Shown here piece after piece: positions 660 to 59,878 of a stretch of 64,000 bases of DNA; position 1 is the first letter of the stretch, and every line of letters begins with the position of its first letter. Source of the DNA: Dendrobates tinctorius (taxonomy: Eukaryota); contig NW_027361861.1 in assembly GCF_039654945.1 (NCBI RefSeq), positions 2,604,001-2,668,000 of the forward strand. Reading direction: 5' to 3'. Position numbers and translations under genes: made by a program. A model generated the notes under the pieces. The model was not told the DNA's origin and searched no databases. It was given only the letters and a program-made list of their open reading frames with translations.

Positions 660-692
660 CCTCCTGATGAAGAGATGAAACGCGCGTTGAGG
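660..692 (+). ncRNA. Minimal type-I hammerhead ribozyme motif
   Basis: CCTC-CTGATGA-A(GAGA)T-GAAA-CGCGCG-TT-GAGG: 4-bp stem I, 1-bp stem II, palindromic stem III, GUU site. Confidence 0.7.
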
Positions 693-1090
693 CGCTTGTG
701 GAGGACCGCATTAGCAGACCATTATTCACATGTAAGTGCCCAGACTTAGCTTTTTACTACAGTAGCCATTCTTAGGCAACACAATGGTACCTTTTGTGTA
801 CTGATAGCCAATACTAAGGGAATGCTAATTAGCTTATGGTTACGTCTGTGATTGACAAATGTGCATTATGTTTACATAAGCAGTAGGTCGGGCTTTTGGC
901 GTTGTCTACTCCTATTATATGTTTGTAGTGACCTTGAAATTGTATTTTGTTAATTAATTTTTTATACATTAGTCTACTATTAATAAAGACTTATTAACTT
1001 TACTGGCATGGTATACTTGTTTATGTTCTTCTGTGGTTTATCACTATAGTGAGTTTTGCCATTTCTTTATCTATGGGTTTTTGTGCTATA
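664..1090 (+). mobile_element. Penelope-like element pLTR fragment
   Basis: Begins with a hammerhead core, then a GTAAGT donor-like site (~732), T-rich body and AATAAA; flanked by direct repeat TAGCTCCTC (655-663, 1091-1099). Confidence 0.65.
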
Positions 1091-2038
1091 TAGCTCCTCA
1101 TACCTGTAATGTGTCCTATAGGTATGTTGCGTCCCCCTGTATCAGCCGCCTACCATCCGTCCATCATGCCTGTACGGTGTCTCGGCGCCGCCCACCATCT
1201 GTCCATCATGATGCCCCTGTGCGTCGCTGCATCGTCCCGTTTTGAATGCCAGCGCCTCCGCTGTGACAAGAGTTCTCGGGCATGCACAGTGCACGCTGGC
1301 CAAGAACCGACATCAGGCTATTGCGCCTGCATGTTGCTGATGCCCCAGCCACGGAGTGTGAACACACCATAACACACTGCAGGGTGGGATCTGGGGCCTC
1401 CACAACACGGAGGCGCATTAACCTGATGTCGGTTCTTGGGCAAAGCGCACTGCGCATGCCCGAGAGCTCTTGTCACAGCGCAGGCCAAATTATGCGTCCC
1501 CTGCGTTTTTGTATCATAATATATTTAACATATGCATAGATGCATTATTTATGGTTATTTAGTGATACTTGTATTGTGTTGTCCACTCTTATGGTGTTCA
1601 ATGCATGTATAATAAGCTTGGTTGGTAATGGTCCTCTATTATCAAGAATCAAGATTGGCATCAAATGCCTTTCATTGACAAGGGAATAAAACTATCTACA
1701 TTCCAATTAACACTTACAGATTTCTGAAAAGTTGGACATATGATGGAGACTAGGGGCAGTCTGCCATCCATAGTAATAAGGGATAATCCTGGATTACTGG
1801 AAATATGCAAATTAGAAGGGTTTGGAACTAGGAGAAACAAGGGAATTACTAAAATACCTCAACCACACAGAAAAGAGTTTAGTATGTTTGCACATTAACA
1901 AGAAGGGTTTAGACTTTTATATTCCCAATTCTATCAATTCTTAAGTCCCCTTAGGGGGCTGTCTACTGAGTGATGATTTAACCGATCACTTGGCCATCAA
2001 CCATCTCAGCCGTCTCTCCCATACACAGGAACGCTCAA

Positions 2039-2297
2039 TCTGCTGAGCTCTCCTGTGTTCTCTAGGAAAGAGCTGCAGTCAGACGTCTCTGGGGGTGGCT
2101 TATATCCCACAGAACAAAAAGATCGGCAGTTGGAAATCGGACATGCCAAATTCTTAACTACCCCAATCTGCTGAGCGCTCCTGTGTTCTGTTCTCTAGGG
2201 GAGAGCTGCAGTCAGACGTCTCTGGCGGTGGCTTATATCACACAGAATAAAAAGGTCGGCAGTTGGTATTCGGACATGCCAAATTCTTAACTACCCC
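2039..2297 (+). repeat. ~130-bp tandem duplication inside a MITE-like repeat
   Basis: tctgctgagc...aaattcttaactacccc occurs twice (~2039-2165, ~2167-2297). Confidence 0.8.
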
Positions 2298-56119: not shown

Positions 56120-58329
56120 TAAGAGAGTCAAAATGAGAAAACAAATACAGAAAATCACCTTGTCTGTTTGGCAAGATTTATTTTTCAAATTATGGTGGAA
56201 AATAAGTATTTGGTCATTAACAAAAGTTCATCTCAGTATTTTGTTATATATCCTTTCTTGGCAAAGACAGAGGTCAAACGTTTTCTGTCAATCTTCACAA
56301 GGATGGCGCACACACTGTTGGTGGTATGTTGACCCATTCCTCCATGCAGATCTCCTCTAGAGCAGTGATGTTTTGGGCCTGTCGCCGGGCAACATGGACT
56401 TTCAAATCCCTCCAAAGGTTTTCTATGGGGTTGAGATATGGAGACTGGCTAGGTCACTCCAGGACCTTCATATGCTTTTTACAAAGCCACTCCTTCGTTT
56501 CTCTGGTGGTGTACTTGGGATCATTATCATGCTGAAAGACCCATCCATGTTTCATCTTCAATGCCCTTGCTGATGGAAGAAGGTTTGCATTCAAAATGTC
56601 ACGATACATGGCTTTATTCATTGTTTCATGTGCACAGATCAGTCGTCCTGGTCCCTTTGCAGAGAAACAGCCCCAAAGCATGATTTTGCCACCCCCATGC
56701 TTCACAGTAGGTATGGTGTTCTTTGGATGCAACTCAGCATTCTGTCTGCTACCAAACAGATCTAATTTGGTTTCATCAGACCATATGATATTCTCCCAAT
56801 ACTCTTCTGGATAATCCAAATGCTCTCTAGCAAACTTCACACGGGCAGGGGGACACATCTGGCACTGCAGGATCTGAGTCCCTGGCGGCATAGTGTGTTA
56901 CTGACGGTAGCCTTTGTTACGGTAGCCCCAGCTCTATGCAGGTCATTCACTAGGTCCCCCGTGTAGCTCTGGGATTTTTGCTCACCGTTCTTGTGATCAC
57001 TTTGACCCCACGGGGTGAGATCTTGCGTGCAGCCCCAGATCGAGGGAGATTATCAGTGGTCTTGTATGTCTTCCATTTTCTTATTATTGCTCCCACAGTT
57101 GATTTCATCACACCATCTGCTTTCCTATAGCAAATTCAGTCTTCCCAGTCTGGTGCAGGGCTATAATTTTGTTTCTGGTGTCCTTCGACAGTTCTTTGGT
57201 CTTTACCACAGTGGAGTTGGAGTGTGATTGTTTTAGGTTGTGGACAGGTATCTTTTATACTGGTAACAAGTTCAAAAGGTGCCATTACTACAGGTAATGA
57301 GTGGAGGACAGAGAAGCCTCTCAAAGAAGTTACAGGTCTGTGAAAGCCAGAAATCTTTCATGTTTTCAGGTGACCAAATACTTATTTTACACCATAATTT
57401 GCAAAATAAATCTTGCCAAATCAGACAAGGTGATTTTCTGGATTTGTTTTGTCATTTGGACTCTCATAGCTGTGGTCTACCTATGATGTCAATTACAGGC
57501 CTCTCTCATCTTTTTGAGTGGGAGAACTTGCACAATTGGTGCCTGACTAAATACTTTTTTCCCCACTATATAACCTAAAACTGACAACAAAATCAGATGC
57601 TATATACAAGTAATAAAAACCACACATTCAGACTTATTTATGGACATGGTTATTTCTGAAAGCGCAAGGGTTTATTGGGGATGAAAATCGGATGATTTTG
57701 AAACCTGACATTTCAGGAAGGCAAACAAACTTGCTTGGGATAAAGCTAAATAACAGAAGATATTTAGTCTGAATAATGACAAGACAAACACTGTAAAATG
57801 CTCCTTTGATTGGTCGCTATTAATCATTTTCAAATCTCTCCATGCATCATTGAAATTAATTTCACTAACTCAGTATGCTGAGCCTTATCTGCTCGCTCTG
57901 TGTAAGATCCATAGAGACATGGCTTATAAGTAATTAGTTTCACATTTTGTATGGCATGTTACCGATCTGATTACTGAAAGCACCTCAATCTTACAAAATT
58001 AAGATCCAAATGAGGATTTTTTTTTTAGAAAAGCAAAGTGTTGCATTTAGCAAACATTTTGCATGCTAATAAAGCTAACTTGCTTAACCGAAAATACAAC
58101 TTATTGGATTGCACTTTTAACCTTGGTAAAAAAAACAACTTCCACGTTTGACCCTCTGTTTACTACTCCAGAGCATTAAAAACATTTGTGCAACTTTGGT
58201 TTGGTTTGACTAAAAATATTGCAACTCACATGAAGTTCTATGTGGTTCTATTGTTACAGACTACAGATAAGCCATTCATAGTTTGTTCCTGCAGTCATAC
58301 CCCCATTTGTCTCTTTCTTTTTGCTAATC

Positions 58330-58590
58330 TACAAGGCCATGAATAAAGAATGGAATCTAAACATCCTCCAAGAACAACTTCTCCCAATCATCCAGGAGCA
58401 ATTTGTTGAAGAACAATATTTTTTCCAGTATGATTGAGACCATGTCAAAAGGAAAAAGCGATAACTAAGTCGCTCGATTAACAAAACATTGACATTTTGG
58501 GTCTATGGCCAGGAAACTCCCCAGGTCTCAATCCCATTGAGAACCTGTGGTTAATCCTCAAAAACCGAGTGAACAAACAAAAATACAGAA
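58330..58590 (+). pseudogene. Tc1 transposase fragment
   Basis: [15 protein letters not shown] motif. Confidence 0.7.
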
Positions 58591-59840
58591 ATCTTTTTAA
58601 CTCCAAAGGCCCGATTCATTATTTGCAATTTATTGAATTTACTTTTCTTTTGTTGTCTTGTGTATTCGCTGACAAATTCTCCAAAATGGCACAGGCGGTT
58701 CATGAATTCAGCGCAAAATAAAAAATGCTATTTATATTAGTCTATAAACATTTTCTGCCACTTTTCAGCACCAAAAGTCACAAAACCATTAAAAAGTCAC
58801 AAAAATGTGCCAAACTAAAAACTAATAAAGAAACCTTACTCCAGGCAAGGACTGGTGTTTGATGCGACAAAAAAAGGCAAAATTTGGTAAAAGTCCCATT
58901 TCATGAATCTGTTAAAACATGTGGAAAAGTTGTGTAGGAAAAATAAAATTAAAATTAAAAGGAAAGACAACTTAAAAAGTGGCTCAAAACATAAAAATAA
59001 TAATGCACAAAACAACAGTGATGAATTGGAGCCCAAGCAGTGATTAGTCAAGAATGAGTTGCCATCAGTCTGATCTTCAGCTGCCAGGGCAAAGGGCAGA
59101 AGTCTTACATAAGGGTCAACACTCTCACTGTAGATATTAAGTCTTTGCACAAATGTGAATCAGTCAACAGATGCTTAAAAAATATGAAATGCTGACCATT
59201 TTACTCCAGTAACAAGAGAAACCTCTGACTAAAAGATATAAAAAGAGCAAAACTGCAAACTTTATGTCAGTCTCAAAACTTTTGCAAACAACTGTAGATA
59301 TACAGTAGACTGCAAAAGTTTTAGGCAAGTATAAGGAAATGTAGTTCCATTTTTTAAGCAATTAACAAAACACAAAGAGAATGAACAAATGAAAATGTAA
59401 ATCAAATCAATATCTGGTGCGACTAACCTTTGCCTTGAAAACATCAATTTGTCTAGATACACTTGCATAGTTTTTGAAGTAACTCAGCAGAGATGTTGTT
59501 CTAAACATCTTGGAGAACTAACCACAGATCTCTGTATTTAGGCTTGTGCCGTAATATTTTTATTTTTTCAGTGACCTAGTTGTATGAGGTCTTGTTTTTT
59601 TTTTTTAGGGTGAGTTGTATCTGTGAGTGGAATAATTTTAGTGTACATGCAACGTACTTCCAAACGTAATTAACTCATTATAAGAGGGAATATAAACATA
59701 ACATGATTTCTGCCACTATTTTTTTTTACATTTTGTTAGGCTGTGTTGCAGAAATAAAGTGTTAACTTTATTGTTTAAGTTAGTATGAATATGTTAATAC
59801 AAAATTTTTATAGTTTTATTCATGTTCATTATTTTGTACA

Positions 59841-59878
59841 AGCAATGATTAAGGACACGTGTCCGAAACACGCTTGCT
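59841..59878 (+). ncRNA. Hammerhead-like motif, A3-U8 core variant
   Basis: AGCA-ATGATTA-A-GGAC(ACGT)GTCC-GAAA-CACG-CT-TGCT; 4-bp stems I and II; U16.1 appears mutated to C. Confidence 0.55.

What the first reader, a model, noticed from the sequence alone, without database searches (positions are those of the whole stretch)
660..59878. Series of minimal hammerhead ribozymes in PLE pLTRs with a covarying 3-8 core pair
Seen: six unrelated repeat fragments share the layout stemI-NTGANNA-A-stemII-GAAA-short (near-)palindrome-NH-stemI. Positions 3/8 read C-G (664, 7347), U-A (18026), A-U (7064 minus, 59845) and U-G (44972). In five of the six an extra A sits between A9 and a G-C-closed stem II; at 660 that A forms the 1-bp stem II. 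Established: PLE pLTRs carry minimal type-I hammerheads with palindromic stem III thought to cleave as dimers, and 3-8 is a tertiary Watson-Crick pair that tolerates compensatory swaps. Inference: frog PLE families use non-canonical cores, including A3-U8, that CUGANGA motif searches would miss.
Basis: partly seen in the sequence, partly recalled or inferred. Interest (0 to 1): 0.8.

Follow-up and report, generated by a model that had tools for sequence, protein, structure and literature searches.

The report
Minimal hammerhead ribozymes with swapped core pair
Five short self-cutting-RNA motifs of a kind already known from Penelope-like jumping genes sit in this window, and three carry a swapped but still matching core base pair, including an A-U version I found in no open paper; this modestly extends known biology.

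Summary
Five of the six sites (7347+, 18026+, 44972+, 59845+, 7064-) are real minimal type-I hammerhead motifs. A search that leaves positions 3 and 8 free finds exactly these five, against 0.38 expected by chance. All five have the extra A after A9 and a G-C-closed helix II.

The 3/8 letters are as reported: C-G, U-A, U·G, A-U and A-U. Site 660 has the core, stem I and an 8-nt palindrome, but no helix II, so it fails the definition. A seventh, decayed U3-A8 copy lies at 16432-16476 (minus), in an inverted arm.

Contigs from three species show that the 7347 motif belongs to a hugely abundant 5'-truncated repeat with a conserved C-G core. The 7064 A-U motif is a repeat of roughly 20-40 copies in which G8 never reaches 8%. 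So that variant is inherited, not decay. The U·G at 44972 may be decay.

The motif type, the extra nucleotide, the palindromic helix III and natural U3-A8 are already published (Cervera and de la Peña 2014; Perreault 2011). Only A3-U8 appears new.

The link to Penelope-like elements is inferred: the window holds no reverse-transcriptase ORF. Cleavage is untested. This scan already holds 10 unchecked A3-U8 notes and 25 U3-A8 notes from other parts of this genome.

The parts
654..698 (+). Hammerhead-like core without helix II. Stem I 5' strand ends at 663. Core CTGATGA is 664-670 (C3 664, G8 669). AGAGAT is 671-676, GAA 677-679, palindrome ACGCGCGT 680-687, U17 688. Stem I 3' strand starts at 689.
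   Evidence: Stem I is 4+3+1 bp. Chance expectation is 0.007 per window with a post-hoc descriptor. No helix II. The lowest-energy fold uses an alternative CCUCC/GGAGG stem.
7018..7089 (-). A3-U8 minimal hammerhead. A3 7064, U8 7059, extra A 7057, helix II 7056-7042, GAA 7041-7039, ACGU 7038-7035, U17 7034. The whole block of about 72 nt is a low-copy repeat flanked by single-copy DNA.
   Evidence: In one search depth is 100-300 here against 9-12 in the flanks, in three species. The only listed variant is 7049 T>C, in loop II. No A>C at 7059 in any of the three DNA-type runs (X1, X5, X7).
7162..7436 (+). 5'-truncated copy of a very abundant repeat carrying a C3-G8 minimal hammerhead. C3 7347, G8 7352, extra A 7354, helix II 7355-7371, GAA 7372-7374, AGCU 7375-7378, U17 7379. 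ATTAAA is at 7409-7414 and the family 3' end at 7436.
   Evidence: In one search thousands of contigs in four organisms match. Loose ends before 7227 and 7345, and pieces that begin at 7302 or 7308, mark copies that start there. 200-260 contigs diverge after 7436. No listed variant lies between 7345 and 7384.
17921..18102 (+). Arm of an inverted pair carrying an intact U3-A8 minimal hammerhead. U3 18026, A8 18031, extra A 18033, helix II 18034-18046, GAA 18047-18049, ACGU 18050-18053, C17 18054. AATAAA is at 18069-18074 and the arm ends at 18102.
16391..16572 (-). Inverted, decayed copy of the 18026 unit, 92% alike. U3 16467 and A8 16462 are retained. G5>A (16465), G12>A, one helix II change and two stem I changes, mostly at CpG. 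The hammerhead spans about 16432-16476.
44958..45020 (+). Minimal hammerhead with U3·G8 wobble. U3 44972, G8 44977, extra A 44979, helix II 44980-44999 (3+5 bp with a bulged A), GAA 45000-45002, ACACGU 45003-45008, U17 45009. AATAAA is at 45055-45060.
   Evidence: Stem I is only 2 bp. No other copy in the window.
59836..59886 (+). A3-U8 minimal hammerhead. A3 59845, U8 59850, extra A 59852, helix II 59853-59864, GAA 59865-59867, ACACGC 59868-59873 (C at 16.1), U17 59874. Stem I is 4 bp, a bulged C, then 4 bp.
   Evidence: Folding z-score is -2.1. No other copy in the window.

Best explanation
Five of the six sites are minimal type-I hammerhead ribozyme motifs of the kind carried near the 3' end of Penelope-like retroelements (PLEs) and their non-coding derivatives.

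Anatomy. Each has the conserved core (U4 G5 A6, A9, G12 A13 A14 A15.1), one unpaired A between A9 and a G10.1-C11.1-closed helix II, a non-G at position 17, and no closed helix III. In place of helix III there is a 4-6 nt palindrome or near-palindrome (ACGU or AGCU). Inferred from published work: two copies pair through this palindrome to form helix III in trans and cut after N17. This may need the element's own protein, as in the Anolis PAc element.

Setting. The motifs lie 48-57 nt upstream of the fixed 3' end of 5'-truncated copies (shown for two families). A poly(A) signal sits in between in three of the five.

The 3-8 pair. Which pair is present is a property of the source family, not damage to the individual copy. 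It is C-G in a hugely abundant family (7347), U-A in the 18026 family (both copies), and A-U in two unrelated units (7064-, 59845).

Exceptions. The U·G at 44972 is most simply a one-step decay product. Site 660 lacks helix II and is at best a crippled relative.
For: - Motif count is 5 against 0.38 expected, and 0.07 expected with the extra A.
- All five have pairable 3/8 (P about 0.01 if unconstrained). Three are Watson-Crick double changes with all other core positions intact (P about 1e-6 to 9e-4 under decay).
- In one search the 7064- block is repeated, at an estimated 20-40 copies, in three species. Counting the change classes in its tables shows no position-8 reversion to G at 8% or more in any of them. 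The only listed variant is in loop II.
- In one search the 7347 family has thousands of copies, copies that start at 7227, 7302, 7308 or 7345, a fixed 3' end at 7436, and no listed variation from 7345 to 7384.
- In one search the two inverted arms, 92% alike, share U3 and A8. Their other differences are mostly CpG decay.
- Head-to-head arms with 3' ends pointing outward, and 5' truncation, are described hallmarks of PLEs, with hammerheads near the 3' ends (PMC8557442).
- Published min-HHR features match: the nucleotide between 9 and 10.1, G10.1-C11.1, palindromic 15.2-16.2, about 9,000 copies in Xenopus tropicalis, and U3-A8 in Schistosoma PLEs (PMC4209133).
- The 3-8 swap is tolerated: natural U3-A8 exists (PMC3088659), and the C3G/G8C double mutant partly rescues a PLE hammerhead (PMC11167929).
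Against: - No reverse-transcriptase or GIY-YIG ORF lies beside any site, and no RT motif C occurs anywhere in the window.
- Family-level data exist for only two of the five families. Twenty rows's variant table were hidden, so a minor T>G at 7064 (C3) cannot be excluded in two of the three species.
- 59845 has an A15.1·C16.1 mismatch. 7064- and 44972 have 2-bp stem I, so these particular copies are probably inactive.
- Thermodynamic folding is no better than shuffles for three of the five.
- Published min-HHRs cleave poorly in vitro.
- No cleavage or RNA-end data were obtained here.
Confidence: 0.7

Rival explanations
1. The non-C-G cores are random mutational decay of ordinary C3-G8 hammerhead copies. 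The pairing is coincidence, and family majorities are C-G.
For: The copies are old and dispersed. The 16467 copy shows heavy CpG decay. U·G at 44972 is a single transition from C-G. 59845 has a further core defect at 16.1.
Against: Three of five independent motifs are double changes that restore a Watson-Crick pair while 11 other fixed positions are untouched (P about 1e-6 to 9e-4). The 7064- family shows no G8 at 8% or more in three species. Both 18026-family copies share U3-A8.
Confidence: 0.08
2. The motifs are inherited family features but no longer work as self-cleaving ribozymes, or never did. They would be conserved for another role, such as a binding or initiation site for the element's reverse transcriptase, or simply hitch-hike on the retroelement.
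For: Min-HHRs cleave weakly in vitro (PMC4209133). The PAc hammerhead needs protein, its catalytic mutants do not affect insertion in vitro, and no RNA ends were seen at its cut site (PMC11167929). PLE clades without hammerheads proliferate well, and 'HHRs may simply parasitize PLEs' (PMC8557442). Eight of nine Xenopus retrozyme dimers did not cleave.
Against: Keeping 3-8 pairable across C-G, U-A and A-U, together with the full catalytic core, G10.1-C11.1 and a palindromic helix III, is what selection on the catalytic fold predicts. A binding site alone would not require the 3-8 tertiary pair.
Confidence: 0.2
3. Some or all sites are chance matches to a loose pattern and do not derive from hammerheads.
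For: The pattern was defined by eye. Rfam hammerhead models give no hit even at E up to 10. Site 660 lacks helix II, and its best fold uses a different stem.
Against: Five hits against 0.38 expected, with no more than 3 in any of 300 shuffles, and 0.07 expected with the extra A. Features not in the descriptor recur: ACGU/AGCU palindromes, non-G at position 17, repeat status. For 660 alone, chance or a crippled relative remains open, at about 0.3.
Confidence: 0.03

Closest known systems
Minimal hammerheads (min-HHR) of metazoan Penelope-like elements (Cervera and de la Peña 2014, PMC4209133; Lünse, Weinberg and Breaker 2017, not readable here)
   Same: Type-I layout. No closed helix III, with palindromic 15.2-16.2 instead. 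One unpaired nucleotide between A9 and 10.1. G10.1-C11.1. Short stem I. Thousands of dispersed, mostly solitary copies, with about 9,000 reported in Xenopus tropicalis. Some pairs lie on opposite strands.
   Different: Two units here have an A3-U8 core, which the readable literature does not mention. No PLE ORF is adjacent in this window.
Natural U3-A8 hammerhead variants (Schistosoma mansoni Cercyon PLEs, about 1,300 hits, PMC4209133; several further natural examples, PMC3088659)
   Same: A compensatory swap of the C3-G8 tertiary pair with the rest of the core unchanged. The 18026 family is exactly this type.
   Different: Found here in a vertebrate genome. The A-U orientation needs two transversions rather than two transitions.
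Non-LTR retrozymes and amphibian satellite hammerheads (Cervera and de la Peña 2020, PMC7229834; Li, Clavereau and Pollet 2026 preprint)
   Same: Non-coding, abundant, hammerhead-bearing repeats related to PLE pLTRs. Weak helix III with dimer-dependent cleavage. The 7347 family's abundance across species fits such a non-autonomous family.
   Different: Retrozyme hammerheads keep a 1-2 bp helix III with a loop and loop 1-loop 2 contacts, and they occur as tandem units. The copies here are solitary, 5'-truncated and lack helix III.
PAc (Poseidon, Anolis carolinensis) hammerhead (Frangieh et al. 2024, PMC11167929)
   Same: A vertebrate PLE hammerhead in which the 3-8 pair was tested directly: single mutants are dead and the C3G/G8C swap partly rescues. 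Cleavage needs the element's protein.
   Different: PAc overlaps the ORF start and has C3-G8. No ORF or protein is available here.

Membership tests
Hammerhead ribozyme, minimal type I (PLE-type min-HHR) | Invariant core U4 G5 A6, A9, G12 A13 A14 A15.1 | tested here: met
   Intact at all six reported sites. The seventh copy (16467-) has G5>A and G12>A.
Hammerhead ribozyme, minimal type I (PLE-type min-HHR) | Positions 3 and 8 form a Watson-Crick pair (C-G or a compensatory swap) | tested here: met
   C-G at 664 and 7347, U-A at 18026 and 16467-, A-U at 7064- and 59845. Only a wobble U·G at 44972.
Hammerhead ribozyme, minimal type I (PLE-type min-HHR) | Helix II closed by G10.1-C11.1 | tested here: met
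   Met at five sites, with 4-8 bp. Not met at 660, which has only AGAGAU between A9 and G12, so 660 is not filed as a member.
Hammerhead ribozyme, minimal type I (PLE-type min-HHR) | One unpaired nucleotide between A9 and 10.1 | tested here: met
   An A in all five helix-II-bearing sites. The descriptor allowed 0 or 1 of any base. Expected by chance 0.07.
Hammerhead ribozyme, minimal type I (PLE-type min-HHR) | No closed helix III; 15.1-16.1 segment palindromic so that two copies can pair; N17 not G | tested here: met
   ACGU at 18026 and 7064-, AGCU at 7347, ACGCGCGU at 660. Near-palindrome ACACGU at 44972. Broken at 59845 (ACACGC). N17 is U or C at all sites.
Hammerhead ribozyme, minimal type I (PLE-type min-HHR) | Helix I of about 4-5 bp flanking the core | tested here: inconclusive
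   Good at 660 (4+3+1), 59845 (4+4 with a bulge) and 18026 (2+4 with a bulge). 3 bp at 7347. Family variants at 7342 and 7343 would each add a base pair (my inference). Only 2 bp at 7064- and 44972.
Hammerhead ribozyme, minimal type I (PLE-type min-HHR) | Site-specific self-cleavage after N17 | not testable with these tools
   All runs were contigs, which cannot show RNA ends.
Penelope-like element pseudo-LTR | Motif lies in the terminal repeat of a unit encoding a telomerase-like reverse transcriptase plus GIY-YIG endonuclease | tested here: inconclusive
   No ORF of 120 aa or more has RT or GIY-YIG domains. No [YF]xDD motif occurs in any frame. Short 5'-truncated copies would not retain the ORF. 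A GIY-YIG-like stretch exists only in a different insert, near 14370.
Penelope-like element pseudo-LTR | Insertion signature: strong 5' truncation with a fixed 3' end; adjacent inverted 5'-truncated copy (head-to-head arms) | tested here: met
   The 7347 family has varied 5' starts and a fixed end at 7436. The arms 16391-16572 and 17921-18102 are inverted with 3' ends pointing outward. These hallmarks are described in PMC8557442. Not assessable for 44972, 59845 or 660.
Rfam hammerhead families (Hammerhead_1, _3, _II, HH9, HH10) | Score at or above the gathering threshold of the covariance model | tested here: not met
   No hammerhead hit at gathering or at E up to 10, on the whole window or on 6900-7500. 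From my own knowledge of the Rfam families, not checked here: their models include a closed helix III, which these motifs lack.

The most novel reading that the evidence does not exclude
Natural A3-U8 hammerhead cores (AUGANUA) are maintained by selection in several vertebrate retroelement families and across species, alongside U3-A8 and C3-G8 families, and they are catalytically competent as dimers. If so, censuses built on CUGANGA descriptors undercount minimal hammerheads substantially, and some elements reported as lacking canonical hammerheads may deserve re-examination with positions 3 and 8 left free. A longer shot, about 5%: site 660 represents a natural hammerhead that works without helix II.
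Probability: 0.4. Interest if true: 0.45.

Novelty: new variant of a known kind. Interest (0 to 1): 0.35.

Why it matters
The C3-G8 pair was the key tertiary contact revealed by the full-length hammerhead structure. Natural covariation is the evolutionary proof that it matters. U3-A8 was already known. An A3-U8 form conserved at family level would complete that picture, and would show that the base identity at position 8 is free as long as it pairs.

In practice it means that descriptor searches fixed on CUGANGA, and the Rfam models, miss a share of retroelement hammerheads. That affects ribozyme censuses and transposable-element annotation in amphibians and probably in other animals. It does not change the understanding of how hammerheads or Penelope-like elements work.

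Tried and rejected
- Rfam at gathering and at E up to 10: no hammerhead hit.
- A covariance model of my own: MAFFT could not align the variable helix II, and I did not type a hand alignment. A Python descriptor with shuffle controls was used instead.
- More copies from public DNA: two exact-pattern scans of metagenome contigs found nothing.
- More DNA from this genome through the window's Tc1 transposase: the exact product is not on record. The two relatives I looked up sit in two unidentified NCBI assemblies. Those 42 kb have no min-HHR and lower G+C, so they are probably not this lineage.
- Search for PLE coding remnants: no RT motif C, and no CxxC...YIG pattern.
- Target-site duplications around the 16391-18102 inverted pair: none seen by eye.
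- Notes search by sequence for 59845: blank.
- Papers not held, so their content on core variants could not be checked: Lünse et al. 2017, Przybilski and Hammann 2007, Arkhipova et al. 2017.
- The supplement of Cervera 2014 showing the Xenopus families is not held.
- One-mismatch hits at 10418+, 48464+ and 54136- look like chance or heavily decayed copies and were not counted.

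
Full report
**Observation**

I read all six sites and re-derived their parts by script. Five share the same layout:
- stem I, then NUGANNA;
- one unpaired A;
- a hairpin closed by G-C;
- GAAA;
- a short palindrome or near-palindrome;
- a non-G nucleotide, then the stem I 3' strand.

Site 660 has a canonical CUGAUGA...GAAA core. It also has a good stem I (4+3+1 bp), an 8-nt palindrome ACGCGCGU and U17. 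Only AGAGAU lies between A9 and G12, so it has no helix II.

**Chance**

I used a descriptor that leaves positions 3 and 8 free. It allows 0 or 1 extra nucleotide of any kind. It also requires a G..C-closed hairpin of at least 3 bp and at most 26 nt, followed by GAAA.

- It finds exactly these five sites on the two strands. All five have the extra A and a pairable 3/8.
- In 300 dinucleotide-preserving shuffles the mean was 0.38 hits and the maximum 3. With an extra A the mean was 0.07. Of the shuffled hits, 39% had pairable 3/8.
- The helix-II-less layout of 660 is expected 0.007 times per window, but that descriptor was fitted to the instance.
- The flanks of the six sites are unrelated to each other.

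**A missed copy**

The 18026 unit is one arm (17921-18102) of an inverted pair. The other arm (16391-16572, minus strand) is 92% alike.
- The second arm keeps U3 (16467) and A8 (16462).
- It has lost G5 and G12 and several stem positions, mostly by CpG decay.
- The arms point outward with their 3' ends.

**Family-level evidence**

It used Logan contigs of four organisms at 80% likeness or better.

*The 7347 family.*
- 7162-7530 is covered by thousands of contigs in all four organisms.
- Loose ends before 7227 and 7345, and pieces that begin at 7302 or 7308, mark copies that start there.
- 200-260 contigs per run diverge right after 7436. This is a 5'-truncation series with a fixed 3' end.
- No variant row is listed between 7345 and 7384. 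The listed variable positions are 7342, 7343, 7344 and 7385, all in distal stem I.
- The C3-G8 hammerhead therefore belongs to a very abundant, cross-species repeat with a conserved core.

*The 7064- block.*
- The block 7018-7089, which is essentially the A3-U8 hammerhead itself, has summed depth 100-300. The single-copy flanks on both sides have 9-12. This holds in three organisms.
- I estimate roughly 20-40 copies from that depth ratio and from the 15-24 contigs that carry the one variant.
- The only listed variant is 7049 T>C, in loop II.
- Twenty rows of the variant table were hidden. I therefore compared the per-run counts of change classes (table 1) with the rows shown (table 3).
- Every A>C place (0 in X1, 2 in X5, 2 in X7) is accounted for by rows elsewhere. 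So 7059, which is U8 on the minus strand, never reads G8 at 8% or more in any of the three.
- T>G at 7064 (which would be C3) is excluded in X5. One hidden T>G row remains possible in each of X1 and X7.
- This rules out 'the family majority is C3-G8' for this family.

**Decay versus covariation**

If 3/8 were unconstrained, five of five pairable has P of about 0.01. At least four of five Watson-Crick has P = 0.016.

If every copy had decayed from C-G at 10-30% divergence, the probabilities are much smaller:
- at least three of five Watson-Crick double changes: P = 5e-7 to 9e-4;
- at least two of five A-U: P = 7e-7 to 3e-4.

The two A-U units differ in N7, helix II, helix III and flanks, so they are independent.

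The U·G at 44972 is one transition from C-G or from U-A. That copy also has a 2-bp stem I. I do not count it as covariation.

59845 carries C at 16.1, so that particular copy is probably dead even if its family is not.

**What it is**

Every feature matches the min-HHR described in the pseudo-LTRs of metazoan Penelope-like elements (PLEs) (PMC4209133):
- no closed helix III, with palindromic 15.2-16.2 instead;
- a conserved nucleotide between 9 and 10.1;
- G10.1-C11.1;
- a short helix I;
- mostly solitary dispersed copies, some pairs on opposite strands;
- about 9,000 motifs in Xenopus tropicalis;
- a U3-A8 covariant with about 1,300 hits in Schistosoma mansoni.

Natural U3-A8 was also reported in several other natural hammerheads (PMC3088659). 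PLE insertions are described as strongly 5'-truncated, often with an adjacent inverted 5'-truncated copy, and with hammerheads near the 3' ends (PMC8557442). That fits the 7347 family and the 16391/18102 pair.

The link to PLEs is nonetheless an inference:
- no ORF of 120 aa or more has RT or GIY-YIG domains;
- no RT motif C exists in any frame of the window;
- a non-autonomous derivative of retrozyme or SINE type is equally possible for the 7347 family (PMC7229834; the 2026 preprint).

**Mechanism**

*Shown here:* the sequence anatomy, the repeat status of two families, and inheritance of the 3-8 state.

*From established knowledge:* C3-G8 is a Watson-Crick tertiary pair (PMC3884650). In a PLE hammerhead, each single mutant at C3 or G8 is dead and the double swap partly rescues (PMC11167929).

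*Inferred:*
- Two copies pair through ACGU or AGCU to form helix III, and the RNA is cut after N17.
- Cutting is probably slow and protein-assisted.
- The cut would lie 48-57 nt upstream of the copy's 3' end.
- AATAAA or ATTAAA lies 22-28 nt before that 3' end in the two families whose end is known.

**Novelty**

No open paper in the library holds 'A3-U8' (or 'A3 U8', 'AUGANUA') together with hammerhead. The paper most likely to contain it, Lünse et al. 2017, could not be read.

Everything else in the finding is published.

This scan already holds 10 first-reader notes on A3-U8 and 25 on U3-A8 elsewhere in this genome. Some describe pLTR copies or tandem units. All are unchecked. I used them only as an indication that the variants recur.

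**Verdict**

Covariation at family level is supported for A-U (one family) and U-A (one pair). PLE membership and catalytic activity are open. Site 660 and the U·G case do not support the claim.

I did not verify the species.

Noticed in passing
window 7409-7414, 18069-18074, 45055-45060: A poly(A) signal (ATTAAA or AATAAA) follows the predicted hammerhead cut site by 15-46 nt in three of the five units. It precedes the known copy 3' ends (7436, 18102) by 22-28 nt. This suggests the template RNA ends at a cleavage/polyadenylation site just downstream of the ribozyme.
   Followed up: partly
window 7340-7382, in other genomic copies (tables 5 and 5c): A few contigs in three organisms show 'goes back 38-43' joints (7377 or 7382 back to 7340, with 3-22 letters in between). 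These are copies in which the hammerhead of the abundant family is duplicated in tandem at about 45-60 nt spacing, the arrangement a dimer-dependent ribozyme would need.
   Followed up: no
window 632-740: Site 660 sits in a stretch bounded by a pyrimidine tract plus AG (about 610-628) and a consensus GTAAGT (733-738). One frame is open from an ATG at 675. It may be an exon, in which case the hammerhead-like string could be coincidental coding sequence.
   Followed up: no
window 35962-36999 (minus): Intact 346-aa Tc1/mariner transposase ORF (HTH_Tnp_Tc3_2 plus DDE_3). It is 94-95% identical to unnamed proteins from sequencing-run assemblies and 83-91% identical to named fish Tc1 transposases, which suggests a young or horizontally shared element.
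   Followed up: partly
window 13860-15083: Fold-back insert (365-nt arms, 92% alike) whose centre encodes a GIY-YIG-like stretch (GVVYLATYSCPKYYIGKT, near 14370). It is a Penelope-like fragment without a hammerhead match in my scans.
   Followed up: partly
window 16880-17080: G+C-rich tandem array (units like CTGTCCCCCGGTGCTGCC) inside the spacer between the two inverted hammerhead arms. Probably a separate insertion.
   Followed up: no
window 54095-54136 (minus): TTGAGCA-A followed by an 8-bp G..C-closed hairpin and GGAA. This is a one-mismatch match to the motif with U3·C8 and G at position 17. It is either a heavily decayed min-HHR or chance.
   Followed up: partly
window 6917-7161, in organisms B and C: Single-copy contigs of two other species align to the flanks of the 7064- block at about 82-85% identity. 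The locus is therefore probably orthologous, and the insertion may predate the split of these species.
   Followed up: no
window 26210-26325: Long hairpin with a sub-threshold match on both strands to a plant miRNA precursor model (MIR1094, E = 1.6e-5, 42 bits against a gathering score of 80). Most likely a palindromic MITE.
   Followed up: no
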